From the sequence record NC_036595.1: a stretch of DNA of 18,222 nt. One strand, written 5' to 3'. The notes beneath the pieces were generated by a model. It was not told where the DNA came from. It did not search any database and saw nothing but the letters and a program-made list of their open reading frames with translations. Within the stretch, counting starts at the first letter, position 1. Each line of letters opens with the position of its first letter. Both the position numbers and the translations under genes were made by a program. Shown here piece by piece: positions 1-18,222 of this stretch.

Positions 1-930
1 GTGAATAAGGCCGTGCTAGCTGTTCTAGCCCCCCTGCTGGCCCTGCTCCTAGCACTAGCCCCGGTAGCCTCGGCGGCTGGGCCGAGCGGTGTGGCGTACC
101 TGCCGCCCAGCGTCGCAATAGAGGGTGCAATCCAGCACAAGGCGCTAGAGGGCTACTCGATAAGCATACCCGCTAGTGACGGGACTACCGCCCAGGTTGT
201 GACCGTCGACCTCAGCCAGTACCTGCCTAGCGGGTTCGACGTTGACGGCGTTAGGCTGATAGTCGAGTCCACGGCGAGCGATAAGATAGTTGTCAAGGCG
301 CTGGATGCTAACAGTAACGTGCTCGCCCAGGCAGACGTGGTACCGCTGAGCTCCGGCTACGAGGTAACACTGCCCGCTGGCACTACACAGTTGCAGTTCG
401 AGAGCCTCTCCACCACAGTCTGGGAAGGCACTATAACGGTGATTGTGGAGTCTGCGATAGACATCGACCTAGTGTTCCAGAGCACGCAGATAACGTTGAC
501 TAACGGCTACGCCGAGGTGCCAGCCCAGGTAAAGGTGTACAACTCGCCCGCCGGGGAGCTGTTCCTGACCGACGATAGGCTAGACTTCGAGGTAAAGTTC
601 AAGGACACGAGCGACAACGACACAAGGGTAGAGATACAGGCGCACAACGACCCAGCCAACCCGGCAATCTACGACACCATAGTGGCTATATCCACCAGCG
701 CCGAGCCGGGCACATACACGATAAAAGTGACCATGTGGCTCTACAACAACGCGCTTAACGCCGAGTACGAGATAGACAGCTTCGACTTCACAGTCACCCT
801 CGAGGGAGATGGAAGCGGTACAGCGACTGTGAGTGAGCAGGCTGAGGAGTTAAGTCTAGACTGGGGCATGATAGGGCTGGGCGCCGTGGCTGCGGTAGTT
901 ATAGTGTTCCTGCTTGCTAGGGCGAGGTGA
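1..930 (+). CDS. Secreted/surface protein with signal peptide and C-terminal membrane anchor; candidate major virion envelope/spike protein
   Basis: N-terminal MNK + hydrophobic stretch + ASA-A cleavage-like site, beta-rich acidic body, C-terminal TM (WGMIGLGAVAAVVIVFLLARAR). First gene of the operon, and its stop overlaps the next start (GTGA). Confidence 0.75.
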   Translation: MNKAVLAVLAPLLALLLALAPVASAAGPSGVAYLPPSVAIEGAIQHKALEGYSISIPASDGTTAQVVTVDLSQYLPSGFDVDGVRLIVESTASDKIVVKALDANSNVLAQADVVPLSSGYEVTLPAGTTQLQFESLSTTVWEGTITVIVESAIDIDLVFQSTQITLTNGYAEVPAQVKVYNSPAGELFLTDDRLDFEVKFKDTSDNDTRVEIQAHNDPANPAIYDTIVAISTSAEPGTYTIKVTMWLYNNALNAEYEIDSFDFTVTLEGDGSGTATVSEQAEELSLDWGMIGLGAVAAVVIVFLLARAR

Positions 931-1121
931 TGGCCATGCTCCCCGTCTTAATCCTGCTCGGTATAGCTGTGCTGGCAGTAGCGCTCGGGTTCATAGACAT
1001 ACAGGCAACATTCGGCGACATTGACTGGAAGATGGTTGGCCTAGGCGCCGCCGCTGGCTTCGCCGCCCTGCTACTCATGAAACCCGGATTGGTCAAAAAG
1101 GCTGTGAACCGCATAAGATAA
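927..1121 (+). CDS. Small protein with two hydrophobic helices; candidate matrix or spindle-type capsid protein
   Basis: 64 aa, two TM segments and a basic C-tail (KKAVNRIR). Coupled to the upstream gene and followed by a T-tract. The structural role is inference. Confidence 0.65.
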   Translation: MMAMLPVLILLGIAVLAVALGFIDIQATFGDIDWKMVGLGAAAGFAALLLMKPGLVKKAVNRIR

Positions 1122-1140
1122 CCCCCTCTTTTTTCTCCCT
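1122..1140 (+). terminator. Oligo-T archaeal terminator after the first two genes
   Basis: CCCCCTCTTTTTTCTCCCT directly after the 1121 stop. Confidence 0.6.
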
Positions 1141-1208
1141 CGCGGGCCTCTCCCGCCTACACCCAGGGCGCCTAGGGCTGGGCCTGGGGGGCATGGGGGG
1201 CGGCCCCT

Positions 1209-1928
1209 ATGCCTCGACGCTTACATGTGTTGTTACTAGTTGCTATACTGGCTAGTGTAGTGTTACCCAGCGTAGCCGTAGCCTCGGCGGAAGACCCCCT
1301 ACCGCTGGAGTGGGGCGACACCGGCAAGGAGCTACCACCAGGATATAGAGTTACTGCGTTGACGCACGGCATCGCCGTAGCCATCGGCGGGCTATCTGGG
1401 TTCGCGGACGCCGTCGCGTGCGTGGGCGACTACTGCTTCGGCCTGGTGGGAGACGACGGGATTATCCCAGTACATGTGAATCTGTTTATCGCTGGCGAGA
1501 CGAGGGAGATAGACACGCTCTGGCAGGGAATGGCTGAGTATGATGCGGATTGGGCCTTCACCCTGCACTGCCCCGGGGAGAGCATAGGTGGCCTAGAGCC
1601 AGGCCCCGAAGAGGCCGTCCTCGAGGTTGAGAGTAGCCAGTACGGCATTAAGAGGTACTACCTAGTCGACCTGAGCCAGGGCGTCTCGCCGGACCTGAAG
1701 TACTTCTACGAGTCCACGCCCGGCGTGACGAGCTGGGTCGAGTTCACAGACCCTGAGAAGGTGAAGGACTGTGGGGGCGACTATCAGGGCGAGCCGCCTA
1801 GCGGCGGCGAAGGTAACAGGCCCCAGGGCGGCGGGCTGCTAGACCTGAATATGACCGTTGATTTAACGTGGCTGGCTCTAGGCCTAGTTGCGGTTGGATT
1901 TCTACTGATACTTCTAAAGAGGTGGTAG
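1209..1928 (+). CDS. Surface protein with signal peptide and C-terminal TM anchor
   Basis: MPRR + hydrophobic signal, Cys pairs, Gly/Pro linker (PPSGGEGNRPQGGG), then TM and LKRW tail. Confidence 0.75.
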   Translation: MPRRLHVLLLVAILASVVLPSVAVASAEDPLPLEWGDTGKELPPGYRVTALTHGIAVAIGGLSGFADAVACVGDYCFGLVGDDGIIPVHVNLFIAGETREIDTLWQGMAEYDADWAFTLHCPGESIGGLEPGPEEAVLEVESSQYGIKRYYLVDLSQGVSPDLKYFYESTPGVTSWVEFTDPEKVKDCGGDYQGEPPSGGEGNRPQGGGLLDLNMTVDLTWLALGLVAVGFLLILLKRW

Positions 1929-1929
1929 C

Positions 1930-2718
1930 ATGCTGAGGCCAGGCGTTGTGGCACTCCTGTTTATAGCGGCTATTGCGATAACACTCGGTATACAACCCCT
2001 GCTGGAGAGGGGTGTGCTTGAGGAAGCCTATTCGCAGGTCTTCGTCATAGTTTGCGAGGGCACGCCGGAATACAGGGAGATGTCGGCGAGCAGTTATGGG
2101 ACTGGGTGGTGGGTCAACGATAGTGGCTACGCCGTGACGGCCTACCACGTGGTGGATACTTGCGACACTATAACAGGTGTTCGGGGTGCCTGGAGCTCAC
2201 AGTTGCAGCTCATCGCCTACAACCCGGAGCTAGACGTGGCCCTACTCAAAGCCGTAAACCCACCTGACTGGGCTGAGGGGTTGCCTCTAGGCTACTCGGC
2301 CAGTATAGGGGATAAGGTGTATATAGTAGGGTATCCGCTGCAGGTGGTAGCTGAGCTTGACGGCGACCTGGCTAGGGCGAGCACGGCGCCTAGGGTGGCC
2401 GAGGCGAGCATAGCCTGGATAAGCCCAGACAGGGCTGTTATGGAGCTTGAAGGTGAGACTGACAAAGGAAACTCTGGCGGCCCAGTAGTCAGCCTAGAGT
2501 CTGGCGGCGTCGTTGGAATCATAGTCTACGCTAGAGAGGGCGCCGTCAGCACCTCGATATATGCGCTGCGTATGGACGCCCTGGCGCCGTTCTTGGACTC
2601 ATACAATGTCGAGTATGAGGTGGCGGGCCGCCCCCCGCTCCTCTTGCTGGGCCTGGGGCTCCTAGGGGCCCTGGGCCTGGCTCTAGTACTTTCGCGGGGT
2701 GTTAGGCTTGGGGCGTAA
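1930..2718 (+). CDS. Trypsin-like (S1/HtrA-type catalytic domain, no PDZ) serine protease with N- and C-terminal TM segments
   Basis: Catalytic triad motifs in order: GTGWWV..VTAYHVV (His), ELDVALLK (Asp), KGNSGGPVV (Ser), followed by GGVVGII. Confidence 0.92.
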   Translation: MLRPGVVALLFIAAIAITLGIQPLLERGVLEEAYSQVFVIVCEGTPEYREMSASSYGTGWWVNDSGYAVTAYHVVDTCDTITGVRGAWSSQLQLIAYNPELDVALLKAVNPPDWAEGLPLGYSASIGDKVYIVGYPLQVVAELDGDLARASTAPRVAEASIAWISPDRAVMELEGETDKGNSGGPVVSLESGGVVGIIVYAREGAVSTSIYALRMDALAPFLDSYNVEYEVAGRPPLLLLGLGLLGALGLALVLSRGVRLGA

Positions 2719-2920
2719 GCCTAAGTCTGACCTGGGGGTTGCATGTCTTGAGGTTGAGGCCCGTAACAGGGCCGAGCTGGCCAGGCTAATGGCAGAATCC
2801 AGGCGGCTAGCGCAGAAACTGGCTGAAATCGAGGAGATACTCCACCAGCAGGCCCTAGACCTAGCCAGGCTGACCGTTAGGCTGGTAGAGCTGGAGTCGA
2901 GGGTGAGGGCCGATGGCTGA
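2699..2920 (+). CDS. Small coiled-coil protein (start uncertain; may begin at the internal ATG near 2789)
   Basis: Heptad-like Leu pattern (LAQKLAEIEEILHQQALDLARLTVRLVELESRV). Fills the gap between flanking genes, and its stop overlaps the 2913 start. Confidence 0.55.
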   Translation: MLGLGRKPKSDLGVACLEVEARNRAELARLMAESRRLAQKLAEIEEILHQQALDLARLTVRLVELESRVRADG

Positions 2921-3377
2921 AGTCGAGATACTGGGATACGTGTTCACACAGGAGCAGCTAGAGGCGTATGCCACGCTGGTGGCCATACTGGGTGGTGCCG
3001 CGGCGACCGGGTTGTTGCTGGGCGTTATGCTAGACCTGCTGGTGCCCCGCAGGCGTAAAGAGGGTGGCGGGGACGGGGAGAGGCCGGGCGTGGAGAAGCG
3101 TGAGAAGAGTGTTGAAGAGCCGAGAATACCTGGTGTAGAGACTGCAGTTGCAGTGCACGTTGCCAGGATGGTGAAGAGCATGCTAGAGTCTGGAGAGGTA
3201 AAGATTAAACTGGTGAGGGATGATTGTGAGGGGGAGATTGTCTTCGACCTGAACACAAACGAGTTCAGATGCATAGACGAAGAGGGCAGGCTGCGGGGCC
3301 TGGGGGAGCCAGAGGCTGAGGACAGCCTAGAGGAGCTGGTGCGCGGCGGGGGTGGCAGGCGTGGCAGGCGCGGCTGA
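2913..3377 (+). CDS. Hypothetical single-pass membrane protein
   Basis: TM segment ATLVAILGGAAATGLLLGVMLDLLV followed by a charged cytoplasmic domain; operon-coupled. Confidence 0.7.
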   Translation: MAEVEILGYVFTQEQLEAYATLVAILGGAAATGLLLGVMLDLLVPRRRKEGGGDGERPGVEKREKSVEEPRIPGVETAVAVHVARMVKSMLESGEVKIKLVRDDCEGEIVFDLNTNEFRCIDEEGRLRGLGEPEAEDSLEELVRGGGGRRGRRG

Positions 3378-4314
3378 GGCGCTGGCGGTCGTGCCGGTGG
3401 GGATACTGGCGGGGCTGGCGACCTTCGCGGTGTATATAAACCGGTATGTGGGCGACTGGGGCTGGCTGACTAGCTGGGGCGACAGGCTGGCGTTCCTGCT
3501 CTGGCCCAGGCCGCCTAGGAACGTTGTGAAACTAATCCACCCCGATGGCAGGATAGACCTGATTTACAATGTGGACGCTAGGGAGAGCAAGAACTCGGTG
3601 GTGTTTGAGACGCCCTTCGGGGTGGTGAAGGTACAGCCCCCCAGGCACCTAGTGTCAGGGTTGAACCTGTACGTGCCAGGCAGGCCCTCGCCGCTCCACT
3701 TCGTTGTTGGGGCGATGGCGGGGCTGCTGGTCGTCTACCTAGTGCTGTATTACGGCTGGCTCTTGATACTGGGCATGGGCGGGTTGAGCCTCGCGGCCTT
3801 CGCAGTGCTGGGTTACGCCTACATGTGGTATCAGGCGGCGATGACGCCTAACACTATATACTACCCGCTCATCGTGACTGCCGTGGCTTCGGGCTTCATC
3901 CAGGCCGTCCCCGCCCCGGGAGAGGCGATATCGCCTAAAGAGTTTCTCAGGATGTACAACCAGGGCGTCAAGATAGTTGTAGACAAAGAGGCGAAAGAGG
4001 CGCTCGAGGAAGTGGCCAACATGTTGGGCGTTAAGGACATAAGCACCGCCGCCGAGATACTGTCGAGCGCGAGCATGTACAGCACGCTGCGGAAGACGAT
4101 AACCTCGATGGCCGCGAGGGCCGCCTCTATAAGCGAGGTGCAGAAGTCGATAAGCGTCTACACGTTCGAGGAGCTTAGGCGGGTCACACTAGGCAGGATT
4201 CTAGCTTGGGGGGTGTTCTTTGTTATAGGTGTTCTGGTGGGGTGGGCCCTCTTCGGCGGCGGGGACGTGGTCATAATGCCAGCCTCTCAGGAGCTGGGGG
4301 TGGCTGGGCCGTGA
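3352..4314 (+). CDS. Polytopic membrane protein
   Basis: Several hydrophobic segments (N-terminal, two or three central, one C-terminal); overlaps both neighbours. Start may be 3352 or 3361. Confidence 0.75.
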   Translation: MAGVAGAAEALAVVPVGILAGLATFAVYINRYVGDWGWLTSWGDRLAFLLWPRPPRNVVKLIHPDGRIDLIYNVDARESKNSVVFETPFGVVKVQPPRHLVSGLNLYVPGRPSPLHFVVGAMAGLLVVYLVLYYGWLLILGMGGLSLAAFAVLGYAYMWYQAAMTPNTIYYPLIVTAVASGFIQAVPAPGEAISPKEFLRMYNQGVKIVVDKEAKEALEEVANMLGVKDISTAAEILSSASMYSTLRKTITSMAARAASISEVQKSISVYTFEELRRVTLGRILAWGVFFVIGVLVGWALFGGGDVVIMPASQELGVAGP

Positions 4315-5393
4315 GGTGGGTTATATTTGTGTTTATAATGCTGGGTCTACTAGCCCAGCCCGTTGCTGGGCTGTCGATCAATTATGTGTTGTACAGTGCA
4401 GACTTCCAAGTGCCAGAGTCGGCTGTCGAGGCGCAGCAAGACGGGAGCGCCGTGCTGGAGCTTCAGTTCTATTTCCCCTGGGACTTTGACTCCGGGTTGT
4501 GGAAGAATAGGGTTAGTGTGGGTGGCTGGGATGGCATCGACGTTGAGAGGCGGTGGATAATAGGTAGCAACGATGTGTTGCTGGCTGTAAGGGCGTGGGG
4601 TTATGTGGATGGTAGTCACGGGGATCTGCTGACGTGTAACGGTGATGTTAGGAGTGCGGACTACACTACAGACCCGGATATAGGGGTGGAGTGCTATGTG
4701 AGCTACAGGCACCCTCTTAGCCAGGCTGGAGACGCTATATACCATATTATGATAGTTGTTACGCCATACGATGCTAGGTATTACCAGGTCGAGTACTACT
4801 TTGAAGGCCAGCTTATAGCCAAGTTCCTGAGGAGCCAGTACACGTACAACAATACAGAAGCCTGGCTGCTCAACACGTTTGACGATATAACAATGCGCAA
4901 TGCACTAGCCACTATAGGCCCGCCTATACCACTCTCGGGCGAGGCCAGGCTGGAGTGGAGTACAGCTATACCAGTCCCTGCTAAGACTGGCTACGAATAT
5001 AGGGTTACCGGCGGCGAGGTAGTAGAGGTTAGAGAGGGGCCGGGCGGGTACCAGCTAATGTATATACAGCCTAGTTTAACGGAGACTGCGAGCCCCTGGC
5101 GGGAATCATGCTATCCATACACGGTGACGCACGAGGGCTACGTGGGCGACACATGGACCACGCTAACCTGGACTAGGATGGAGTGTGAGACGATATACAC
5201 GACAATCTACACTGGGGAGATAATCCTCGAGGCTTACGAGCCCGGCAGTAACAGCCTCGAGGCTGTGCTGAGGCTGAACTTGCTACCCCAGGACGGCGCC
5301 GAGGGCGGTGGCAACAGGACACTAGCTCTAGTGGGGCTGGGGCTTATCGTTGCGGCGGTTGTAATGTTACTGCTTAGGGGTGGCAGGCGGTGA
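4311..5393 (+). CDS. Surface protein with signal peptide and C-terminal TM; possible ConA/LamG-like lectin domain
   Basis: Start reassigned from 4206 to GTG 4311 (GTGA overlap with the upstream stop), which gives a clean signal peptide MRWVIFVFIMLGLLAQPVAG. C-terminus EGGGNRT + TM + RGGRR. Confidence 0.75.
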   Translation: MRWVIFVFIMLGLLAQPVAGLSINYVLYSADFQVPESAVEAQQDGSAVLELQFYFPWDFDSGLWKNRVSVGGWDGIDVERRWIIGSNDVLLAVRAWGYVDGSHGDLLTCNGDVRSADYTTDPDIGVECYVSYRHPLSQAGDAIYHIMIVVTPYDARYYQVEYYFEGQLIAKFLRSQYTYNNTEAWLLNTFDDITMRNALATIGPPIPLSGEARLEWSTAIPVPAKTGYEYRVTGGEVVEVREGPGGYQLMYIQPSLTETASPWRESCYPYTVTHEGYVGDTWTTLTWTRMECETIYTTIYTGEIILEAYEPGSNSLEAVLRLNLLPQDGAEGGGNRTLALVGLGLIVAAVVMLLLRGGRR

Positions 5394-5584
5394 GGCATGG
5401 TGGCATACTCATTATCTTACTTATAGCTGCTGTGGTTGGGGCGAACCTGTATGTACAATTGAGCTGGGACTATGCAGATGCCCCGCCAGACGTAAAGCAA
5501 GCGCTACTGATAGGTGGCCTGGGGATGCTGGGGCTCGCCCTGCTGGGCTTCCCCCTATTGTTGAGGCGGGGCGGCAGGGTCTAG
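5390..5584 (+). CDS. Small two-TM protein
   Basis: 64 aa, two hydrophobic helices, RRGGRV tail, GTGA-coupled to the upstream gene. Confidence 0.7.
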   Translation: MRHGGILIILLIAAVVGANLYVQLSWDYADAPPDVKQALLIGGLGMLGLALLGFPLLLRRGGRV

Positions 5585-5592
5585 GCGGGGGC

Positions 5593-5661
5593 GGTACCAT
5601 TGTGGTACCAGTATGGTACTGGCCAGGGGGGACCTGGTACCAGGTGGTACCTGGCGGTACT
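5593..5661. repeat. Six GGTAC(C) copies with about 10.5-bp periodicity and nested palindromes
   Basis: GGTAC at 5593, 5604, 5615, 5636, 5646, 5656; perfect 14-bp palindrome ACCTGGTACCAGGT at 5632-5645. Confidence 0.85.
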
Positions 5662-5932
5662 GCCACTGGCGGTGTTGCTGGACGCCACAACAACAACGAT
5701 AGGCCTGTGGCTGGGCCTGGCTGAGAATGGGCCCCTGGCTTCCATGCTTCTCCCGGTCCTGGGCCCCCTGTACTGGCTGCTGGAGCTCACAGTAATACTC
5801 ATATTATACAATGTAATAAGGAGATACGCCAGACTGCCTAGCGACTGGGCCATGTTGGTCTCGGTTATTGGGCCCTGGACCGCCGGCTGGGCCAACCTCG
5901 CAATGGTAGCTAGGGTGGTGCTGGGTGGTTGA
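5600..5932 (+). CDS. Membrane protein resembling the DUF5658-type small archaeal membrane family
   Basis: Motif LLDATTTTIGLWLGLAENGPL (D-x-x-TT...G...E-N-x-P-L) with three hydrophobic helices; TTG start after GGCGGGGG. The family call is from memory of the motif. Confidence 0.6.
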   Translation: MWYQYGTGQGGPGTRWYLAVLPLAVLLDATTTTIGLWLGLAENGPLASMLLPVLGPLYWLLELTVILILYNVIRRYARLPSDWAMLVSVIGPWTAGWANLAMVARVVLGG

Positions 5933-6284: not shown

Positions 6285-6287
6285 ACC

Positions 6288-6301: not shown

Positions 6302-6355
6302 TTAGTATAAATAAATGGGGGCGGGGTATATACCCCTATATGGAAATACATACTT

Positions 6356-11949: not shown

Positions 11950-11958
11950 TTATGGCCC

Positions 11959-12285: not shown

Positions 12286-12496
12286 GCGTAGGGCCGAGGC
12301 CCTCGCCTGGTTCTTCCAGAGGCTAGGCCTCAGGGTGGTGCTCAGAGAGGATGGCGGTGAGGGGGTCAGCGTCAAGTACGGTGGTGTCTGGTGGCTGGAC
12401 CCAGACGAGGCGATACGCCACATAGTCTCGCGGGGCTGGGGTAATTTCAATCCACGTTTAAAAACATCGGTTAATGGGGGTGGACGTCCTTTATGA
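12239..12496 (+). CDS. Small hypothetical protein, possible Cys-less glutaredoxin-like fold (likely start ATG 12248)
   Basis: beta-alpha-beta pattern (VVIAYSP..AEALAWFFQRLGLRVVLRE..VSVKYGG..DPDEAI); fold call is weak. Confidence 0.55.
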   Translation: MMEMAEVVIAYSPHTRRRAEALAWFFQRLGLRVVLREDGGEGVSVKYGGVWWLDPDEAIRHIVSRGWGNFNPRLKTSVNGGGRPL

Positions 12497-13512
12497 CCCG
12501 GGTTTCCCCAGCACGGGCTGGGGCAGGCGCCGTGGTGTTCTACAGGGTCAAGCGGGTCAAGGGCAGGTACTACCTTGTCAAGGAGTGGTGGGACCCGGGG
12601 TTGAAGAAGAAGATCACCAAGTCGATAGGCCCCTGTGAATGGCTAGAGGGCCTCAGCGAAGAATACAGGGAGAGGACGCGGGGTACTAGGGGCCCCGCCC
12701 CTAGAGTGGTGCCGCGGCCGGGATTTGAACCCGGGTCACGGGCTCGAAAGGCCCGCAGTAGGCGGGGCGCCCAGCCTACCGTTTCCCCAGGCAACGGGTC
12801 CACCGTGGAGCCCTACTACAGGCGGCTATGGGAAACCTGGTGCCTGGAGAGGGGCACAAGCCCCGAGACCTGTGCCAGGTACTCGGGCTACCTGCAAAAG
12901 CCCCTGGACCCAGGCAACCGCTGGAGCGCCAAGGCCTGGAAGCTCTACTACAAGTGGCGGTGCGAGCTGGGGGACCAGACGGCCTGCGAGGACTACAAGA
13001 GGGTGAAGGTGCCGCAGGCCGGGGCGGACAAGCGGGTGCCAAGCCTAGAGGCAATACTAGACAGTATAGAGAGGGCGGGCCCCTACCGCATAGTCTACAT
13101 TATCCTGCTAGAGTCTGGGCTCAGGCTGGTAGAGGCGGTGAAGCTTATCCGCGAGTACGATAGGCTGGAGTGCACCAGGCTGGACGGCTACACCCGCTGC
13201 CTGCTGGGCTACACGCGGGGGAAGAAGAGGGCGCTCTGGGGCTACCATATCACGCCTGTAGAGCCTATGGAAGACCTGACGGACAGAAGGGTGACAAGCT
13301 ACGCAGAGAAGTACAGGCTAACCCCGCCAAAGTACATTCGAAAGTTCGTGGCCACTAAGATGGCCGAGCTAGGCGTTCCCTTCGAGGTTATAGACTTCAT
13401 ACAGGGCAGGACGCCTAGAAGCGTGTTGCTCCAGCACTACGCCCAGCTACTGGGCGTGGCGGACAGGGAATACGCCAAGTATGCTAGGTGGCTCAGGGGG
13501 TGGATGGGGTGA
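12493..13512 (+). CDS. int: SSV-type tyrosine recombinase (integrase), intact form
   Basis: N-terminal YRVKRVKGRYYLVK domain; antisense-tRNA peptide VPRPGFEPGSRARKAR; catalytic motifs ESGLRLVEA (R), KKR, KYIRKF (K-x-x-R), FIQGR and QHYA (Y). Confidence 0.95.
   Translation: MTRVSPARAGAGAVVFYRVKRVKGRYYLVKEWWDPGLKKKITKSIGPCEWLEGLSEEYRERTRGTRGPAPRVVPRPGFEPGSRARKARSRRGAQPTVSPGNGSTVEPYYRRLWETWCLERGTSPETCARYSGYLQKPLDPGNRWSAKAWKLYYKWRCELGDQTACEDYKRVKVPQAGADKRVPSLEAILDSIERAGPYRIVYIILLESGLRLVEAVKLIREYDRLECTRLDGYTRCLLGYTRGKKRALWGYHITPVEPMEDLTDRRVTSYAEKYRLTPPKYIRKFVATKMAELGVPFEVIDFIQGRTPRSVLLQHYAQLLGVADREYAKYARWLRGWMG
12707..12757 (-). other. attP core: 3' half of tRNA-Glu(TTC) including CCA, embedded in the integrase gene (not a complete tRNA)
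   Basis: Reverse complement TGCGGGCCTTTCGAGCCCGTGACCCGGGTTCAAATCCCGGCCGCGGCACCA gives anticodon stem CGGGC/GCCCG, loop CT-TTC-GA, T-arm CCGGG-TTCAAAT-CCCGG, 3' acceptor strand and CCA. No D-arm or 5' acceptor strand is present. Confidence 0.93.
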
Positions 13513-13703
13513 GGCTTGAGGTCCTGGTGCTGCAAAATCCTGACCATAAAACACTGCGTAGGCTGCTCAGGCGGCATAACGGCAGGATACTGGCTGTAGC
13601 CCTTGTCGTCGAGGTCGAGAGCAAAAAACAGGTTTCAGCTCTTGCGAGGCACTATAGGCTTAGGCCTCTCCCCGTCCCCGCCACCCTCTTTATCGAGCAC
13701 TAG
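13509..13703 (+). CDS. Small basic hypothetical protein (64 aa)
   Basis: Start reassigned to GTG 13509 (GTGA overlap with the integrase stop, GGGGG upstream); converges on the ATPase gene. Confidence 0.55.
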   Translation: MRLEVLVLQNPDHKTLRRLLRRHNGRILAVALVVEVESKKQVSALARHYRLRPLPVPATLFIEH

Positions 13704-13709: not shown

Positions 13710-14648
13710 CTAGCTGTTCCACCTTATTTTTATTAGCGGCTTATGTGTTCCATTCTCCCTGAGGTAGAAGTCTATCCCGTTCCCTCTCCTCACAGTCTTT
13801 ATACCTTTAACGTATGTCTCATACTGTATTGTAGGCTTCCCAGTTCCATCGTTCCATTGTTCCTCTCCAGCCCCGCCAGCATGCTCCACCCTAGCCTGCT
13901 GGGGTAGAGCCTCGAGGCTCCGCCTAGCCTCTGGCTCTGCCCTCACTAGCGATCGGTGGCGTTTAAGCACAGCAACAGCCCTGTGCACGGTCTGCCACGT
14001 GACCTCAGGGTCATTACTAGTCCACAACTTCATAGATAAGTCGTGTAGTGCCATAAGACCTGCACCCCCGACTAGGGGGCCTAGCAACCTGAAGTCGGCT
14101 GGCTCGTCTGGGTAGCTCTTGAAGAACTTGAGCACCGCCATACGCCTAAACGTGATATCCACTAGGTGGTAGACCTGCGAGGCGTGGACTGCGAGTAGGA
14201 ATCCGTTGAATCCTAGGGCCTTGAGCCTATGCCTTATCATAATGTAAGCCTGCGACTCGCTAACGTTCTCCCTGGACATTGCCCGCCTTCCATGCCCGCC
14301 CTTGGTGGCGGGGGCGTCGTCGTTGAATATGTAGAGGTACATACACCTATCTAGGTCTAGGCTTGTAGCGGCCTCTAGCAACTGCTGTATCCCGGCCTCT
14401 TTACCGTAAACATAGCATATCGAGTAGTCGTCCACGCCCTGGCCTAGGAGCGCCTGAACGGCCTCTCCCAGCTTAGCCTCGATAAAGGTGGTCTTGCCAC
14501 TACCCATCTCCCCCACTATTAGGGCGCTCCTCATATGCAGAGGAGCCCTCTCCACAAACCCAGGCGGCGGGGCCATGTAAGCTAGGATACGGCCCCTAAC
14601 CTTAGTCTCGGGGGTCTCCTGTGTCACTACCTCTTTCATTGCTACCAC
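13710..14648 (-). CDS. A32-like (FtsK/HerA superfamily) P-loop ATPase; probable genome-packaging/assembly ATPase
   Basis: Walker A GEMGSGKTT, Walker B LYIFNDD, then IRH....LLAVHASQVYHLVDITFRR, matching the RH...hhhsQ...hR signature of A32-type ATPases. Confidence 0.85.
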   Translation of the reverse strand: MVAMKEVVTQETPETKVRGRILAYMAPPPGFVERAPLHMRSALIVGEMGSGKTTFIEAKLGEAVQALLGQGVDDYSICYVYGKEAGIQQLLEAATSLDLDRCMYLYIFNDDAPATKGGHGRRAMSRENVSESQAYIMIRHRLKALGFNGFLLAVHASQVYHLVDITFRRMAVLKFFKSYPDEPADFRLLGPLVGGAGLMALHDLSMKLWTSNDPEVTWQTVHRAVAVLKRHRSLVRAEPEARRSLEALPQQARVEHAGGAGEEQWNDGTGKPTIQYETYVKGIKTVRRGNGIDFYLRENGTHKPLIKIRWNS

Positions 14649-14965
14649 TCCTCTTCCAGCCTCTGCCTCTTCACCAGCAAGCCCGCCTGCTGCAGCATCC
14701 TAGCCACACGCCTGTACACGGCCATAACCTCGTGGTAGCTCCTAGCCCTGGCCAGCTCCTGATACAGCCCATCCACCCCGCCCTTAACCACTGGGTCGGC
14801 CAGGTCGAGTAGCACCAGCACGGCGCCCCGCAGCTCAGCCAGCTTATACTCCTGCCTGGCCCTAGGGGTACGCCAGTACTCGGTGGCCAGCCTGGCTATC
14901 CTCTCCACCTGCTGGGTCAACACCCACGTGTAATCCACCCTGTCTTTTGTAACCTCGTATGTCAT
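14642..14965 (-). CDS. Helical hypothetical protein adjacent to the ATPase
   Basis: Preferred ATG 14965 immediately after the upstream stop (14967); coupled to the ATPase. Confidence 0.7.
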   Translation of the reverse strand: MTYEVTKDRVDYTWVLTQQVERIARLATEYWRTPRARQEYKLAELRGAVLVLLDLADPVVKGGVDGLYQELARARSYHEVMAVYRRVARMLQQAGLLVKRQRLEEEW

Positions 14966-14966
14966 G

Positions 14967-15302
14967 CTATTCCACCTCTCCACCCTCTTCTATAGCGCCT
15001 GGCGGCTGGCTCATCTCCTTGAGGAAGTCCTCGTCAACAGGGATCCCCTCACGGCACACCACAGCCATTAGGAGCAGCATCTTCTCGCTGGGCGGTAGGC
15101 CCCGGGGGCTGTAGGCCCACCTCAGGCCCTGCCAGGCAAAATACCCCTGGAGCCTCTCCTCAACCTCACCACAATCCCTGGCGCCGACCAGCAGGCCCGC
15201 CAGCTCCGCCGTGACCTCGTCACCGAGTATGCGCCCGAGCCTCTCGACTAGCCTGTCTATACTCCTCTTCCCCAGCCTATAGCTCTGTATATCGAAACTC
15301 AC
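14967..15302 (-). CDS. Hypothetical protein (111 aa)
   Basis: GTG start with GGGGGGTGG upstream; operon context. Confidence 0.7.
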   Translation of the reverse strand: MSFDIQSYRLGKRSIDRLVERLGRILGDEVTAELAGLLVGARDCGEVEERLQGYFAWQGLRWAYSPRGLPPSEKMLLLMAVVCREGIPVDEDFLKEMSQPPGAIEEGGEVE

Positions 15303-15376
15303 ACTAGGCCACCCCCCGCATAATGAGGGTGAAATGGGGAAAAACAGGTGTACTACTTACGGGCCCCCTTTCTTCC

Positions 15377-16153
15377 CTAGAATCCTATGATATCGTCTAG
15401 GTGCTCCAGCTCATACCTGGCTACATCGTCTAGCTCCCTAGCGACCATCTTCTCCCACTCGCTGTCCTCATACATCCTACTGATGTACTTCCACCTCTCC
15501 AAGTCTTCCTTGGCTATCTCCTCTAGCGTCTTACCCAGGGCTTCCCTAACTAGCCCCTTGGCATAGTGGTAGCCTAGAGACCAGTCCACTAGCTCTTTCC
15601 AGTCGTATTGATACGGGTCTATACCCTTCTCCTTAGCTCTGTCGTGTATTGCCTTCGCTAGTGCTAGCGCCATTATATATGTCCAGACCCTATCCTTTCC
15701 CCTCTTGTAACGCTTGGGTATCCATCTCCAGATGTCCTCTGCTAGGCTCCTAACAGCGGGGCTCCTGGCCCAGGTCTGCCTAGCCCTCTTCAGGGCCTTA
15801 GCCAGGGCCTTGGCTGTTATGGCTTTTACAGCCTTAGACTCGACCTTCTTACCGGCTCCCAGCTTCTTGGTTACCTTCTTCGCCTGGCTCTTGCTGGCCT
15901 TACTAACCTCTCGCTTTAGCCTTCTAACAACCTTTATCACGTCGTGGGTGTGTCTCCAGGGGCCCCTGCCTACCTTCTTCCCCCTGCGCCTGTCCAGGTG
16001 TGGGGTGTGCTTCGATATGTGGCTCCTAGAGCGGGCGTAGTAATGGCCCGGGCCAGTCCACGCCTTCTCGCACGCCCTCTTACTGTACCCCCTCTCCTCG
16101 CACCACTTGAGCAGTTGTTTCTTCGTCTTGAAGAAGTAGAGCTTGGTTACCAC
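15377..16153 (-). CDS. Highly basic K/R-rich protein; candidate nucleoprotein
   Basis: Very K/R/A-rich first ~140 aa (histone H1-like KKVTKKLGAGKKVESKAVKA), acidic helical C-terminus; directly downstream of the VP2-like gene. Confidence 0.7.
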   Translation of the reverse strand: MVTKLYFFKTKKQLLKWCEERGYSKRACEKAWTGPGHYYARSRSHISKHTPHLDRRRGKKVGRGPWRHTHDVIKVVRRLKREVSKASKSQAKKVTKKLGAGKKVESKAVKAITAKALAKALKRARQTWARSPAVRSLAEDIWRWIPKRYKRGKDRVWTYIMALALAKAIHDRAKEKGIDPYQYDWKELVDWSLGYHYAKGLVREALGKTLEEIAKEDLERWKYISRMYEDSEWEKMVARELDDVARYELEHLDDIIGF

Positions 16154-16159
16154 ACCGCC

Positions 16160-16402
16160 TCACCCCCCGAGCACGTATAGCTTGAACTGTATCTTACGCT
16201 TGATCCTGCGCCAGTGGCTCCCCGCCAGCCGCTTGAGGAACTCTTCGTCCTTGTAGAGCTTCCGCAGCACCCTATCGTTTATCTCGCCAGTTTTCGTAAA
16301 CGGGTCGCCGTACCTACGCTTTATAGCCTGCCTATGCTTGAGCAGCCACCTGGTTAGGCTGCCCCACCTAATCCTGCTCCAGTCTATCCTACGCCTAGCC
16401 AT
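16160..16402 (-). CDS. SSV1 VP2-like virion DNA-binding protein
   Basis: 80 aa, very basic. GSLTRWL...RYGDPFTKTGEINDRVLRK resembles the VP2 core (G..hR.L...YG..AFTKDG.I) as recalled from fusellovirus VP2. Confidence 0.7.
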   Translation of the reverse strand: MARRRIDWSRIRWGSLTRWLLKHRQAIKRRYGDPFTKTGEINDRVLRKLYKDEEFLKRLAGSHWRRIKRKIQFKLYVLGG

Positions 16403-16406
16403 AGTA

Positions 16407-17399
16407 TCACCGCCTCATAAGCATGAACAATATAGCCACTGCAACCAGGCCCAGTGGTACCAGCAGGCTGCGCAGGTTCAGCCCGCCGCCCTCTCCCGTG
16501 AGCGTTATCGTCTGGACCTCGGTAACCACCCTAGTCCCGCCTGGGCCTGTGGCTGTGTATGTTGTTGTTATCACGCTTGTGTATGTGTCCGTGTAGGTGT
16601 AGGTTGTCGTGGACGTCTCTGTCTCTGTTATCGTGAACGTTTCTGTCTGGACAGGTACAACAACAACTGCACTATCCGCCGTGGCCTGGCTAGTGAACTG
16701 GTAGTCGTTCACTAGGCCAGCTAGACCTAGGCTATAGCCCACCGAGACCGAGCCAGCACTAGGGCCCTGCCCGATGCTTGCTGCAGTACTAGCTACGCTA
16801 CAATTATATATTGTCTTTGTGGTTGTAGACGTGTAGTTTATCGTCACATCTGTGTGATTAACATACTCGAAATAGCCAGACCTGCTGCCGTCCCACGTGT
16901 GTGACCCCACACTCTCGTCCAGTAACACCGTCCCGTCTGGGAGCTTTATCACCACGTGGGTGGGATCCGAGTAACCACTACCACTATGGTTTATGCCTGT
17001 TAGGGTTAGTGTTATACTTGTTAGCGTATCGCTAGTGATGCTGAATGAGCCAGTCACCGTGTAACCACTCTGTGAAAAACTGGCTGCATCCACCCATTGC
17101 CCGAGCTCCTGGACATACGTCTCAAACTCTGTAACGCTACCCCCGAAACTGTTGGGAGTGAATTCTATAGTGAACTCGAAGACATAAAATGTTGCCGCGT
17201 TCCCAGTGCAGATTGAGCTTAGGTCGTTCGACGTTCCGACTTCAAGGTCAACAGCATACCCAAAAACATAGTCGAGAGAGGTCGGGGCTGTCGTGGGGGC
17301 TGAGACTGTAGTCTGGCCATACACCAGACCCGCAAACACCGAAACCACTAGCAATATAGCGGTAAAAATAAGGCTGTGTAAATTGTGAAATTTAGGCAT
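16407..17399 (-). CDS. Surface glycoprotein/adhesin-like protein with signal peptide, Thr-rich stalk and C-terminal TM
   Basis: Hydrophobic N-terminus; S/T-rich beta domain with four N-x-S/T sequons (NHS, NHT, NYT, NCS); TETFTITETETSTTT stalk; EGGG + TM + MRR. Confidence 0.8.
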   Translation of the reverse strand: MPKFHNLHSLIFTAILLVVSVFAGLVYGQTTVSAPTTAPTSLDYVFGYAVDLEVGTSNDLSSICTGNAATFYVFEFTIEFTPNSFGGSVTEFETYVQELGQWVDAASFSQSGYTVTGSFSITSDTLTSITLTLTGINHSGSGYSDPTHVVIKLPDGTVLLDESVGSHTWDGSRSGYFEYVNHTDVTINYTSTTTKTIYNCSVASTAASIGQGPSAGSVSVGYSLGLAGLVNDYQFTSQATADSAVVVVPVQTETFTITETETSTTTYTYTDTYTSVITTTYTATGPGGTRVVTEVQTITLTGEGGGLNLRSLLVPLGLVAVAILFMLMRR

Positions 17400-17420
17400 G
17401 CCAGGCCACCCCTGAGGGTG

Positions 17421-18077
17421 TTATGGCAAGGTTATCTTGTACACAACTGTTACAACATCGTTAGCGTTCACCGCAAACGCGTTGGCACCCAGATCATCAT
17501 ACAACATTAGAGCATCTTTAGTTGCATTACTTGAATTAATGCTTAGCCTGCTGTAAACGCCCACACCATATACTGTCCCGCTCTGTGTTGCAACTATGCT
17601 TGCCGACAATATGAACGATTTTGTAGAACTGTCAAACTGGAGCCCGCCTGTACCTACCTCTGCAAAATCATACGCCCCAGGAAGCAGATACATTGTGTAG
17701 TTGTACGTGTATGCACTATCATAGTTTATGAAAATATATGCTGGATAAAACGTCCCATCGATTCTATCGATTTTTGCTCCGGTGATATCAACCATATCTG
17801 GATAGATATTGTTAGTATCATAATATATCAAATCACCAGCGAGCAATGATGCAACAGCCACAACAAAGTTTTGCGTGGAAGGGTCGTCGGGGTCGTAGTG
17901 GATTAGCTCTCCGTTCTTGTATATGTATAGCTCGGCCTGGAGTGCCCGGGGGCCCTGCTGTAGCGTCACCTCTATGTCTTGTTGTGGGGCTAGGTGGTAG
18001 CCGCCTAGGAAGCCAGCTAGCAAGACTAGGGTAAGCATGGGTATGGCTAGGAGCCCGCGCCTGTCCATACGCGCCAC
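17421..18077 (-). CDS. N-terminally anchored protein with a tail-collar/adsorption-protein-like C-terminal beta domain
   Basis: N-terminal TM. The C-terminal GVGVY...ALMLYDDL...VNANDVVTVVYKITL pattern resembles phage tail-fibre/baseplate attachment domains (weak). Start GTG 18077 or ATG 18068. Confidence 0.65.
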   Translation of the reverse strand: MARMDRRGLLAIPMLTLVLLAGFLGGYHLAPQQDIEVTLQQGPRALQAELYIYKNGELIHYDPDDPSTQNFVVAVASLLAGDLIYYDTNNIYPDMVDITGAKIDRIDGTFYPAYIFINYDSAYTYNYTMYLLPGAYDFAEVGTGGLQFDSSTKSFILSASIVATQSGTVYGVGVYSRLSINSSNATKDALMLYDDLGANAFAVNANDVVTVVYKITLP

Positions 18078-18214
18078 CCTGCTCTACTATAGTCTATTGA
18101 GCGCCGTGTGTTTTCTCTGTACAAACCGCTGTACACTATATAGTTACCATGCTGTGCAGGCTGCTGCATAGTCAAAACCATGTTTGTATATAGACTCTAT
18201 AGTAGAGCCAGGGT
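18076..18214. promoter_or_regulatory. Inverted-repeat-bounded intergenic region; putative divergent late promoter
   Basis: ACCCTG-CTCTACTATAG--TCTAT (18076-18097) versus the reverse complement of 18190-18214, ACCCTGGCTCTACTATAGAGTCTAT; each arm ends in an outward-facing SD-like AGGGTG. Confidence 0.7.
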
Positions 18215-18222
18215 GTGGGACT

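What the first reader, a model, noticed from the sequence alone, without database searches (positions are those of the whole stretch)
1..18222. Probably a complete circular genome of an undescribed temperate crenarchaeal virus
Seen: the integrase is uninterrupted across its tRNA-derived att, the window starts exactly on a GTG, and it ends with AGGGTGTGGGACT, which mirrors the leader of the - strand operon and supplies an SD for gene 1 if the ends are joined. Established: SSV-type integrases are split on integration, so an intact one marks the episomal/virion form. Inference: the mix of SSV-type int, VP2-like protein, A32-like ATPase, protease, pilin and more than ten membrane proteins, with no recognisable Rep, does not match a family gene order I can name.
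Basis: partly seen in the sequence, partly recalled or inferred. Interest (0 to 1): 0.85.

Follow-up and report, generated by a model that had tools for sequence, protein, structure and literature searches.

The report
Aeropyrum globular virus 1, already described
The window is, base for base, the complete circular genome of Aeropyrum globular virus 1, an archaeal virus already in GenBank and described in a 2021 preprint, so it is real and complete but not new; the only new points are that it has uncatalogued relatives, some inserted in archaeal chromosomes.

Summary
The interpretation "complete circular genome of a temperate crenarchaeal virus" is right, but "undescribed" is wrong.

The window is 100% identical, colinear and with the same start as LC208019.1 / NC_036595.1, Aeropyrum globular virus 1 (AGV1). 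That record is 18,222 bp, circular, host Aeropyrum pernix. It is described in bioRxiv 10.1101/2021.04.21.440749. The finding's own refutation criterion is therefore met.

Confirmed:
- The SSV-type integrase is intact, with a 51-nt tRNA-Glu(UUC) 3' fragment inside it.
- The GTG start and the terminal AGGGTG mirror are as described, and ORF1 gets a genome-typical Shine-Dalgarno only across the 18222/1 junction.
- There is a trypsin-like protease, a pilin-like protein, 13 hydrophobic proteins and no recognisable Rep.
- The ATPase is A32-like (FtsK-HerA) at fold level only.
- "VP2-like" is not supported.

Beyond the preprint:
- AGV1 has relatives in vent-type metagenomes and MAGs, sharing about 10 colinear genes.
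- Some relatives are integrated at tRNA-Glu with the integrase split exactly at the core.
- The RefSeq "tRNA-Glu gene" is an attP fragment, not a tRNA gene.

The parts
1..18222 (.). Complete circular dsDNA genome of Aeropyrum globular virus 1 (AGV1)
   Evidence: megablast 100% identity, 100% coverage, one piece, same numbering, to LC208019.1 / NC_036595.1; the record is circular, 18222 bp
1..930 (+). ORF1_309, major virion protein: signal peptide, beta-rich ectodomain, C-terminal membrane anchor
   Evidence: N-terminal sequencing of the 28.5 kDa virion band (preprint). Hydrophobic segments at residues 4-22 and 288-306. No Pfam/PHROG family. Family of about 24 clusters at 50% identity in 1.84e9 representatives, alignment A2.
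936..6284 (+). Membrane-protein (virion/morphogenesis) operon ORF2-ORF11. Includes ORF3_233 (1227-1928), ORF4_262 membrane-anchored trypsin-like serine protease (1930-2718), ORF7_317 (3361-4314), ORF10_110 and ORF11_119.
   Evidence: Trypsin_2 E 7e-20. 10 of the 11 proteins ORF1-ORF11 have hydrophobic segments. ORF3, ORF4, ORF7, ORF10 and ORF11 are conserved and colinear in relatives.
6285..9400 (+). Low-GC (47-51%) region with long intergenic gaps and three copies of an about 85-nt promoter/operator-like repeat upstream of ORF12, ORF13 and ORF14 (6330-6415, 6768-6853, 7699-7784). Also holds ORF15_146, an RHH protein.
   Evidence: composition; direct repeat family D1; alignment with 80% mean column identity; 0 such matches in 200 shuffles; NikA-like/RHH hit
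9388..12496 (+). Accessory/DNA-binding block: ORF17_88 (missing from RefSeq), ORF18_111 (APOV1 homolog), ORF20_141 pilin-like, ORF21_191 nuclease, ORF22_70 CopG/RHH, ORF23-25
   Evidence: VirArc_Nuclease E 6e-9, Pilin_N 24.3 bits against cutoff 25.2; RHH_1 E 6e-7; phrog_9634 nuclease E 4e-67; ORF18 62% identical to APOV1 orf3-113; ORF17 homolog in L101
12493..13512 (+). ORF26_339, SSV1-type tyrosine integrase, intact
   Evidence: Phage_integr_3 E 8e-35; phrog_5127 E 2e-104; SSV1 Int structures E 3e-32; 31% identity over full length to SSV4 Int
12707..12757 (-). attP core: the 3' 51 nt of tRNA-Glu(UUC), from the anticodon stem to CCA, overlapping integrase codons about 72-89
   Evidence: Rfam tRNA hit. 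12710-12756 was the search pattern; 107 chromosomal stretches carry it exactly, and in all of them identity runs on for exactly 1 more nt (12757), plus CCA in 51 of them. Split-integrase hits end at residue 88 or begin at residues 66-72.
13509..13703 (+). ORF27_64, small basic protein conserved next to the integrase in relatives. Its 3' end holds one arm of a perfect 30-nt inverted repeat.
   Evidence: homologs at 50-67% in L120, L123, L126; inverted repeat I1
13710..14639 (-). ORF28_309, P-loop ATPase of the FtsK-HerA type, closest to A32/B204-like viral packaging ATPases at fold level
   Evidence: Walker A GEMGSGKT, Walker B YIFNDDA. AF2 mean pLDDT 85. Foldseek hits: EssC, STIV2 B204 (E 5e-5, TM to target about 0.5), and A32-like ATPases in BFVD. 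51 clusters listed, the query's own included.
14642..18068 (-). Remainder of the minus-strand operon: ORF29_107, ORF30_111, ORF31_258 (basic, APOV1 homolog), ORF32_80 (very basic), ORF33_330 and ORF34_215 (secreted or membrane-anchored)
   Evidence: ORF31 73% identical to APOV1 orf15-259. ORF29, ORF30 and ORF34 are conserved in relatives. Hydrophobic segments in ORF33/34, and 24 K+R in 80 aa for ORF32.
18069..18222 (.). Divergent control region between ORF34 and ORF1 (continues at base 1). AT-rich, with an imperfect 23/26-nt inverted repeat separated by 93 nt, and a mirrored SD at each outer end. The authors propose it as the origin.
   Evidence: sequence; inverted repeats; preprint; equivalent palindrome-bearing divergent regions in L117, L118, L120, L123

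Best explanation
The window is the complete, circular, episomal (virion-form) genome of Aeropyrum globular virus 1 (AGV1). AGV1 is a 60-nm spherical dsDNA virus of the hyperthermophilic crenarchaeon Aeropyrum pernix. It is already deposited (LC208019 / NC_036595) and described in a preprint.

Shown:
- Two divergent operons start from one palindrome-bearing control region that spans the 18222/1 junction.
- The plus-strand operon encodes the major virion protein, which is membrane-anchored, plus a run of membrane proteins and a membrane-anchored trypsin-like protease.
- The minus-strand operon encodes secreted or membrane-anchored proteins, basic proteins and a P-loop ATPase.
- The integrase gene carries, inside its own reading frame, a 51-nt copy of the 3' part of tRNA-Glu(UUC).
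- In relatives, integration at chromosomal tRNA-Glu splits the gene exactly there. A complete tRNA is left at the Int-N junction and only the 3' core at the Int-C junction.

Inferred:
- The virion contains lipid, with the major protein anchored in the membrane.
- The FtsK-HerA/A32-like ATPase loads or translocates the genome.
- The protease matures virion proteins.
- Replication relies on host machinery, because no Rep, polymerase, primase or helicase is recognisable.
- AGV1 stays episomal in its isolation host, possibly because that host lacks an exact attB.
For: - Identity: 100% over 18,222 of 18,222 bases, one aligned piece, same origin of numbering. The record is annotated as circular, host A. 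pernix.
- Preprint: virions were purified, the major virion protein was identified as ORF1_309 by N-terminal sequencing, the circle was closed by PCR/Sanger, induction used Tris-acetate, and there was no lysis.
- Circular closure from the sequence: ORF1 has the genome-typical GGTG Shine-Dalgarno only across the junction.
- Circular closure from relatives: ORF34-like and MCP-like genes are adjacent and divergent in L117, L118, L120, L123 and L126.
- Integrase.
- Split integrase at tRNA-Glu in MAGs:
  - Int-C (residues 66/72-336, 76% identity) is in L071/L123 and L080/L120.
  - Int-N (residues 1-88, 73-85% identity) is in L101, L110, L021 and L028.
  - ARAGORN finds a complete tRNA-Glu only at the Int-N junctions.
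  - Two MAGs each hold both junctions.
- ATPase fold.
- Membrane proteins: 13 of 34.
- No replication protein in Pfam or PHROGs.
Against: - Nothing contradicts the identification.
- Integration of AGV1 itself has never been seen: the authors found no attL/attR in the host draft genome. 'Temperate' therefore rests on the integrase, the attP, inducibility and integrated relatives.
- The ATPase assignment rests on moderate Foldseek scores (TM 0.35 to the query, about 0.5 to the target). RecA and AAA+ proteins appear in the same list, and sequence profiles give only the P-loop.
- The major-protein model was too poor to use (pLDDT 51), so its fold is unknown.
- Lipid content was not measured in the sections of the preprint that I read.
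Confidence: 0.97

Rival explanations
1. It is an undescribed virus.
For: No family assignment exists: NCBI lists it under unclassified archaeal viruses. Most ORFs have no family in Pfam or PHROGs.
Against: There is a 100% identical full-length match to a named GenBank/RefSeq record and a descriptive preprint.
Confidence: 0.01
2. It is a non-viral integrative plasmid or a defective excised provirus, not an autonomous virus.
For: No Rep and no recognisable capsid fold. Copy number is only 1e-3 per host genome without induction. Relatives are mostly seen as integrated elements.
Against: DNA was extracted from purified 60-nm particles. The major particle protein is encoded by ORF1. Genome copies rise in the supernatant after induction, and adding the virus fraction retards host growth. 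The MCP, protease and ATPase module is conserved in relatives.
Confidence: 0.03
3. The record is an incomplete or mis-closed assembly, so the true genome is larger or linear.
For: It was assembled from short-read Velvet contigs merged by hand. One relative is at least 31 kb. A perfect 30-nt inverted repeat sits 10.6 kb apart, and such repeats can mislead assemblers.
Against: Gaps were bridged by PCR and Sanger. The junction recreates a normal SD and a divergent promoter region. Gene order on both sides of the junction, and right around the circle, is colinear with independent relatives.
Confidence: 0.03
4. The ATPase is the replication initiator (AAA+/DnaA/Orc-like), as the preprint suggests, not a packaging motor.
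For: Weak sequence hits of the P-loop region to Orc4, FtsH and AAA Pfam families. AAA+ proteins also appear in the Foldseek list. No other replication candidate exists in the genome.
Against: All those sequence hits are below threshold and cover only the Walker A region. hhalign against the APOV1 DnaA-like protein gives 4.7% probability. The best structural matches are FtsK-like EssC/EccC and STIV/STIV2 B204, followed by A32-like packaging ATPases. The gene belongs to the conserved virion-module set rather than the variable block.
Confidence: 0.25

Closest known systems
Aeropyrum globular virus 1 (LC208019.1 / NC_036595.1; Yumiya, Fukuyama, Sako and Yoshida, bioRxiv 10.1101/2021.04.21.440749)
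   Same: Everything: 18,222/18,222 bases, same orientation and numbering.
   Different: - RefSeq omits the CDS at 9388-9654 (ORF17_88 by my numbering of the preprint's 34 ORFs).
- RefSeq calls the attP fragment a tRNA-Glu gene.
- RefSeq carries product names without support here: acyl-CoA dehydrogenase, GMP synthase, Glu-tRNA reductase, and 'trypsin-like' for a 70-aa ORF.
Fuselloviridae (e.g. SSV4, NC_009986)
   Same: SSV1-type integrase with attP inside the gene (31% identity). SSV4 uses the same tRNA-Glu core (59 nt, 96.6% identity). A shared nuclease (28%). CopG-like RHH regulators.
   Different: There are no VP1/VP3 capsid homologs and no DnaA-like B251 homolog. Only 2 of 34 genes are shared. 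The virion is spherical, not spindle-shaped. The tRNA core is read in a different frame of the integrase.
Guttaviridae, Aeropyrum pernix ovoid virus 1 (NC_028256)
   Same: Same host genus. Three shared genes: ORF18_111 (62%), ORF31_258 (73%) and the integrase C-terminal domain (31%).
   Different: There is no shared major virion protein, protease or ATPase. APOV1 has a DnaA-like protein that AGV1 lacks.
Globuloviridae (PSV NC_005872, TTSV1 NC_006556)
   Same: Spherical particle of similar appearance (preprint).
   Different: There is no detectable protein similarity: the best tblastn E-value is 0.087, and hhalign of the MCP family against PSV VP2 gives 0.2% probability. The Globuloviridae genomes are linear and 21-28 kb; AGV1 is circular with an integrase.
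A32-like / FtsK-HerA genome-packaging ATPases (STIV and STIV2 B204, PDB 4KFT/4R2H; NCLDV A32)
   Same: Walker A and B motifs, and a core ASCE fold matched by Foldseek with E 5e-5 to 1e-4 and TM to target about 0.5.
   Different: There is no sequence-profile membership. AGV1 has an extra C-terminal domain of about 100 aa. No double-jelly-roll capsid protein accompanies it, which is the usual partner of A32-like ATPases.

Membership tests
Aeropyrum globular virus 1 (species) | Near-identical full-length genome sequence | tested here: met
   100.0% identity, 100% coverage, single piece
SSV1-type integrases (archaeal tyrosine recombinases that partition on integration) | Catalytic domain homologous to SSV1 Int | tested here: met
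   Pfam PF16795 at 120.5 bits against cutoff 27. PDB 3UXU/3VCF/4DKS at E 3e-32, with the LESGxR, TRGxK, RKF and HY motifs aligned.
SSV1-type integrases (archaeal tyrosine recombinases that partition on integration) | attP lies inside the integrase ORF and matches the 3' part of a tRNA gene | tested here: met
   The 51-nt tRNA-Glu(UUC) core at 12707-12757 overlaps Int codons about 72-89
SSV1-type integrases (archaeal tyrosine recombinases that partition on integration) | The gene is split into Int-N and Int-C at the provirus ends after integration | tested here: met
   Met for close relatives (73-85% identical integrases), not for AGV1 itself. Int-N 1-88 sits next to a complete tRNA-Glu; Int-C 66/72-336 sits next to the core only. 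Both junctions occur in the same two MAGs.
Fuselloviridae | VP1/VP3-type capsid proteins and the conserved fusellovirus core genes | tested here: not met
   Only the integrase and the nuclease give tblastn hits to SSV4
Globuloviridae | Homologs of the PSV/TTSV1 structural proteins; linear genome | tested here: not met
   No hit below E 0.087. hhalign gives 0.2% probability against PSV VP2. AGV1 is circular.
Guttaviridae (Betaguttavirus, APOV1) | Shared gene complement including structural genes | tested here: not met
   3 of 34 genes are shared, and AGV1's own virion-module genes (ORF1 MCP, ORF3, protease, ORF7, ATPase) give no hit in APOV1. Which APOV1 genes are structural was not established here.
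A32-like / FtsK-HerA packaging ATPases | Walker A and Walker B on an ASCE core | tested here: met
   GxxGSGKT and hhhFNDD are invariant or near-invariant in 30 homologs
A32-like / FtsK-HerA packaging ATPases | Fold closest to FtsK/HerA/A32 rather than AAA+ or RecA | tested here: inconclusive
   The top PDB hits are EssC and B204, but RecA and AAA+ follow within one log of E-value, and TM to the query is only 0.35. The BFVD list is dominated by A32-like ATPases.
A32-like / FtsK-HerA packaging ATPases | Sequence-profile membership | tested here: not met
   Only sub-threshold generic AAA/P-loop Pfam hits. PDB profile search gives Orc4 at E 0.011.
Functional tRNA gene (as annotated in RefSeq: tRNA-Glu 12710-12785) | Complete cloverleaf with paired acceptor stem and D arm | tested here: not met
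   ARAGORN finds none. Rfam scores 30.8 bits with two acceptor mispairs and a 25-nt D region. Identity to real tRNA-Glu genes stops one base 5' of the anticodon stem.
Archaeal type IV pilin-like proteins (ORF20_141) | N-terminal class III signal peptide plus hydrophobic helix (Pfam Pilin_N) | tested here: inconclusive
   24.3 bits against gathering score 25.2, E 5.8e-5. A hydrophobic segment at residues 13-31.
   ORF31_258 hits only APOV1. ORF32_80 hits no archaeal virus other than AGV1 itself (one marginal hit, E 0.02, to an unannotated faecal phage record). Nothing in PSV/TTSV1. What remains is a compositional resemblance: small and basic.

The most novel reading that the evidence does not exclude
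AGV1 is not a singleton. It is the only cultured member of an uncatalogued, family-level lineage of viruses and proviruses of marine hydrothermal Desulfurococcales, Acidilobaceae and Pyrodictiaceae.

- The lineage is defined by a colinear core: a membrane-anchored major virion protein, ORF3, a trypsin-like protease, ORF7, ORF10/11, an FtsK-HerA-type ATPase, ORF29/30 and ORF34.
- Members do integrate at tRNA-Glu by the SSV mechanism.
- AGV1 may remain a low-copy episome in its isolation host because that host has no exact attB. The 47-nt core was found in 107 stretches of species-representative genomes (106 contigs). Two of them are from Aeropyrum sp. MAGs, and none from A. pernix or A. camini. 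The authors report that host reads did not map to the tRNA-Glu part of AGV1.
Probability: 0.6. Interest if true: 0.45.

Novelty: already known. Interest (0 to 1): 0.2.

Why it matters
For the scan, this is a true positive on "complete viral genome" and a false positive on "undescribed". One megablast against public virus records settles it.

For archaeal virology, three side results may be useful:

1. AGV1-like elements are more widespread than the single isolate suggests. They are absent from the copies of IMG/VR and INPHARED searched here.
2. Integrated relatives show the integrase type is functional. This contrasts with the non-integrated state reported for AGV1 and suggests a simple, testable reason: no exact attB in the host.
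3. An FtsK-HerA/A32-like ATPase in a pleomorphic-looking, membrane-protein-rich virus without a double-jelly-roll capsid gene bears on how such viruses load their genomes.

Tried and rejected
- Major virion protein structure from a 3-sequence alignment gave mean pLDDT 51, so it was not used for fold search.
- Pfam scan of 19 MCP-family members gave only faint beta-sandwich hints.
- ATPase by sequence against PDB and Pfam gave only the P-loop. hhalign against the APOV1 DnaA-like protein was negative.
- hhalign of the MCP family against the 612-aa protein in the equivalent position of the Pyrodictium abyssi element matched only the membrane anchor. That element is a more distant relative, sharing 4 genes.
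- The word-indexed protein search was hampered by low-complexity words. It gave 3 and then 5 hits, where the exhaustive profile search gave 29.
- IMG/VR scans with MCP and ATPase profiles returned only AGV1 itself. Two alignments were too divergent to seed a scan.
- The JGI metagenome scan gave 21 mostly short fragments and no complete relative with an intact integrase.
- GC skew as origin evidence was rejected as independent evidence. The skew turns at about 13.7 kb and 18.1 kb, exactly where gene orientation switches, so it may reflect coding strand rather than replication.
- The 30-nt perfect inverted repeat was searched in all fetched relatives with up to 6 substitutions and was absent.

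Full report
**Identity**

A megablast of the whole window against 50,697 public phage and archaeal-virus records gives two full-length hits. Both are 100.0% identical, cover 100% in one piece, and run on the same strand from record position 1 to 18222. They are LC208019.1 and its RefSeq copy NC_036595.1, "Aeropyrum globular virus 1", host Aeropyrum pernix, Japan.

The record is annotated as circular, with 33 CDS and one tRNA feature. NCBI taxonomy places it under unclassified archaeal viruses.

The virus is described in bioRxiv 10.1101/2021.04.21.440749 (Yumiya, Fukuyama, Sako, Yoshida, 2021). That preprint reports the following:
- 60-nm spherical particles, induced by Tris-acetate buffer.
- An 18,222-bp circular dsDNA genome with 34 ORFs.
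- The major 28.5-kDa virion protein identified as ORF1_309 by N-terminal sequencing.
- An SSV1-type integrase with a tRNA-Glu sequence inside it, but no integration site found in the host draft genome.
- A copy number of 1e-3 per host genome before induction and 9.5-26 after.
- Eight CRISPR protospacers.
- No lysis.

The finding's own refutation clause is met for the word "undescribed". No other paper in the searchable library mentions the virus.

**Check of the observations**

All are in the sequence.
- The integrase ORF 12493-13512 is uninterrupted at 339 aa. It matches Pfam Phage_integr_3 (E 8e-35) and the crystal structures of the SSV1 integrase catalytic domain (E 3e-32). It aligns over its full length with the SSV4 integrase (31% identity).
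- The window ends ...TAGTAGAGCCAGGGTGTGGGACT and starts GTGAATAAG.
- I scored a GGTG/GAGG-type Shine-Dalgarno between -16 and -6 of each annotated start, treating the sequence as a circle. 29 of 34 genes have one. ORF1 has GGTG at -11, supplied entirely by the last bases of the window. The first minus-strand gene, ORF34, has GGTG at -10 in the mirror-image arm.
- The two arms are the imperfect inverted repeat reported by the authors, 23 and 26 nt separated by 93 nt.
- There is no terminal direct repeat.

**The tRNA-derived att**

ARAGORN finds no tRNA in the window. Rfam's tRNA model just passes (30.8 bits against 29) at 12710-12792 on the minus strand. However, two acceptor-stem pairs are broken and the D region is 25 nt instead of 13. 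The anticodon loop CUUUCGA gives Glu(UUC).

An exact search for the 47-nt stretch 12710-12756 in one genome per prokaryotic species found 107 stretches, on 106 contigs. All are from Sulfolobales, Desulfurococcales, Acidilobaceae, Pyrodictiaceae and relatives. In every one, identity to the window continues for exactly one more base toward the 5' end of the tRNA. In 51 of them it also continues for the three bases of CCA.

The tRNA-derived segment is therefore 51 nt (12707-12757), overlapping integrase codons about 72-89. The rest of the RefSeq "tRNA-Glu" feature (12710-12785) is viral coding sequence that happens to fold weakly.

**Does this integrase type integrate?**

The authors could not find AGV1 integrated. 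I searched the 107 tRNA-Glu loci with all AGV1 proteins.
- Four loci carry an Int-N fragment (residues 1-88, 73-85% identical) ending exactly at the end of the core: L021, L028, L101 and L110.
- Two loci carry an Int-C fragment (residues 66/72 to 336, 76% identical) beginning at the core: L071 and L080.
- ARAGORN calls a complete tRNA-Glu(UUC) at all four Int-N junctions and none at the Int-C junctions. This is the geometry expected from SSV-type recombination within the core.
- The junctions pair up within assemblies. Candidatus Calypsonella navitae M2_131 holds L071 and L101. Acidilobaceae MAG T11_metabat1_scaf2bin.074 holds L080 and L110. In each case the provirus runs off contig ends between them.
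- Next to the Int-C fragments lie homologs of AGV1 ORF27. Beyond them come, in AGV1 order, the minus-strand operon, the major virion protein, ORF3, the protease and ORF7.

It also shows that close relatives of AGV1 are true temperate viruses.

**Relatives and the circle**

The major virion protein has no homolog in any deposited virus genome other than AGV1, and none in the IMG/VR copy. An exhaustive profile search of 1.84 billion representative proteins finds 29 hits at E <= 1e-3. About 24 of these are full-length proteins of 300-400 aa. All share the following features:
- a signal peptide;
- the motifs VVPLSSGY and VWxGTITVxV;
- a C-terminal membrane anchor.

Contexts were recovered for:
- two REYS20-1 metagenome contigs (31.3 kb and 10.6 kb);
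- a JGI contig (13.9 kb);
- three proviruses in NCBI assemblies: JBPNQN010000009.1, JALWEI010000029.1 and JALWPV010000028.1.

A tblastn matrix shows 8-12 AGV1 genes in each, in the same order. The shared set is ORF1, ORF3, ORF4 (protease), ORF7, ORF10/11, ORF28 (ATPase), ORF29, ORF30 and ORF34, plus ORF27 and the integrase where that end is present. The AGV1 segment 6427-12496 is not found in any of them.

In five relatives the ORF34-like and ORF1-like genes are adjacent and divergent. In the four I inspected (L117, L118, L120, L123) the gap is 140-165 nt and contains palindromes. This is independent evidence that bases 18222 and 1 are neighbours.

By contrast, only a few genes are shared with classified archaeal viruses:
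- APOV1 (Guttaviridae) shares 3 genes.
- SSV4 (Fuselloviridae) shares 2.
- PSV and TTSV1 (Globuloviridae) share none.

**Gene content claims**

- Protease: Trypsin_2 at E 7e-20, with hydrophobic segments at both ends.
- Pilin-like ORF20: just below Pfam's cutoff.
- Membrane proteins: 13 of 34 products have at least one strongly hydrophobic 19-residue segment. These include 10 of the first 11 ORFs, and ORF33 and ORF34. The authors' TMHMM count is the same.
- Replication: no Rep, polymerase, primase, helicase, MCM or Orc/Cdc6 family appears in Pfam or PHROGs for any ORF.
- "VP2-like": ORF31_258 is 73% identical to APOV1 orf15-259 and matches no other virus. The very basic ORF32_80 matches no archaeal virus other than AGV1, and its one other hit is marginal (E 0.02, an unannotated faecal phage record). 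Only a compositional resemblance to small basic DNA-binding proteins remains.

**The ATPase**

By sequence alone, ORF28_309 is only a P-loop protein.

The family has 51 clusters in the 5.8-billion-protein collection, counting the query's own. These include proteins 70-88% identical and one in the complete genome of Pyrodictium abyssi.

An AlphaFold2 model built on 30 homologs has mean pLDDT 85. Foldseek gives these matches:
- Against the PDB: the FtsK-like EssC/EccC, and the STIV and STIV2 B204 genome-packaging ATPases (E 5e-5 to 1e-4, TM to target about 0.5). RecA and AAA+ proteins follow closely.
- Against predicted viral structures, after AGV1's own entry: an uncultured archaeal virus protein (35% identity), a Nitrosopumilus spindle-shaped virus protein, and then a long run of "VV A32-like packaging ATPase" entries and adenovirus IVa2.

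The preprint's DnaA-like suggestion is not supported by a profile comparison with the APOV1 DnaA-like protein.

**How it most likely works**

Shown by the evidence above:
- A single control region spanning the junction drives two divergent operons.
- The virion module is rich in membrane proteins.
- The major protein is membrane-anchored and N-terminally processed. The authors' N-terminal sequence matched an internal position.
- The integrase/attP arrangement is of the SSV type, and relatives integrate at tRNA-Glu.

Inferred:
- The particle is lipid-containing and is released without lysis.
- The ATPase loads DNA into the forming particle.
- The protease matures structural proteins.
- Replication uses host proteins.

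The authors place the origin in the junction region on GC-skew grounds. However, the skew turns exactly where gene orientation turns, so this is not independent evidence. The low-GC block at 6.3-9.4 kb, with three 85-nt repeats, is an alternative candidate.

**Why AGV1 might not integrate in its host**

This is a hypothesis, not a result. Among the 107 exact matches to the core there are two Aeropyrum sp. MAGs, but neither A. pernix nor A. camini. The preprint also states that no host reads mapped to AGV1 "including tRNAGlu". If the isolation host lacks an exact attB, the episomal carrier state would follow. I could not fetch the A. pernix tRNA-Glu gene to test this.

**Verdict**

The window is a real and complete genome of an already known virus. 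Interest for discovery purposes is low. The side results are modest additions that a specialist could follow up: an uncatalogued AGV1-like lineage, proof of tRNA-Glu integration in relatives, the fold-level assignment of the ATPase, and several annotation corrections.

Noticed in passing
window 3056-3085 and 13663-13692: A perfect 30-nt inverted repeat (TAAAGAGGGTGGCGGGGACGGGGAGAGGCC and its complement) sits 10.6 kb apart, sharply bounded with no flanking similarity. One arm encodes KEGGGDGERP in a low-complexity linker of ORF6_154. The other is the 3' end of ORF27_64, just downstream of the ATPase stop on the other strand. Both ORFs are on the plus strand, so their mRNAs would be complementary over 30 nt. 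The chance expectation is about 1e-10. It is absent from all fetched relatives and remains unexplained.
   Followed up: partly
window 6330-6415, 6768-6853, 7699-7784: Three copies of an about 85-nt element (80% mean column identity) lie directly upstream of ORF12, ORF13 and ORF14, in the low-GC (47-51%) part of the genome. Each has a TTTATTA TATA-like box, GCTATATG, and a small hairpin CCGTAAAACGG. It is probably a repeated promoter/operator cassette. I did not see it mentioned in the sections of the preprint that I read.
   Followed up: partly
window 12710-12785 (RefSeq feature C1186_gt01): The 'tRNA-Glu' gene annotated in RefSeq is not a tRNA gene. Only the 3' 51 nt (12707-12757) are tRNA sequence, and ARAGORN rejects it. 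It is the attP core.
   Followed up: yes
window 9388-9654: This 88-aa ORF, which by my count of the preprint's 34-ORF numbering is ORF17_88, is missing from the RefSeq CDS list. It has a homolog (45% identity, E 7e-9) in the Ca. Calypsonella provirus fragment L101, so it is probably a real gene.
   Followed up: yes
window 2708-2920, 11959-12285, 12248-12496, 15377-16153: The RefSeq product names 'putative trypsin-like protein', 'acyl-coA dehydrogenase', 'GMP synthase' and 'putative Glutamyl-tRNAGlu reductase' have no Pfam support at E <= 0.01. The one exception is a sub-threshold GlutR_dimer hit (17 bits against cutoff 22.9). They look like over-read weak domain hits.
   Followed up: yes
window 12710-12756 within ORF 12493-13512, compared with L122 (SSV4) 7506-7563: AGV1 and SSV4 carry the same tRNA-Glu core inside their integrase genes but translate it in different frames: RVVPRPGFEPGSRARK in AGV1 against DLNPGHGLERPALGG in SSV4. 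The SSV4-like frame exists in AGV1 only as an overlapping non-coding ORF, 12725-13006.
   Followed up: partly
L002 + L007 (ENA REYS20-1 scaffold_1712, 31.3 kb): This larger relative (GC 63%) carries the AGV1-like virion module plus genes AGV1 lacks: an 850-aa DEAD/ERCC3-type helicase, dCTP deaminase, ThyX, thymidylate kinase and a Dam methylase. Genome size and replication or nucleotide-metabolism content therefore vary widely in this lineage.
   Followed up: partly
L125 (Pyrodictium abyssi AP028907.1, 743413-764402): A cultured Pyrodictium carries an element with homologs of the AGV1 ATPase (49%), protease domain (35%), ORF29 and ORF11, in the same divergent-operon layout. It has no detectable AGV1-type major protein, SSV-type integrase or nearby tRNA.
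   Followed up: partly
L123 7229-7669 and L126 7392-7826: Two AGV1-like elements carry a Fic-domain protein immediately upstream of the ATPase, in place of AGV1 ORF29-side genes. It is a possible host-manipulation or toxin-like cargo gene.
   Followed up: no
window 838-878: A sub-threshold Rfam hit to the C/D-box sRNA family sR60 (24.9 bits against 50, E 0.034) lies inside the ORF1 coding sequence. It is probably chance.
   Followed up: no
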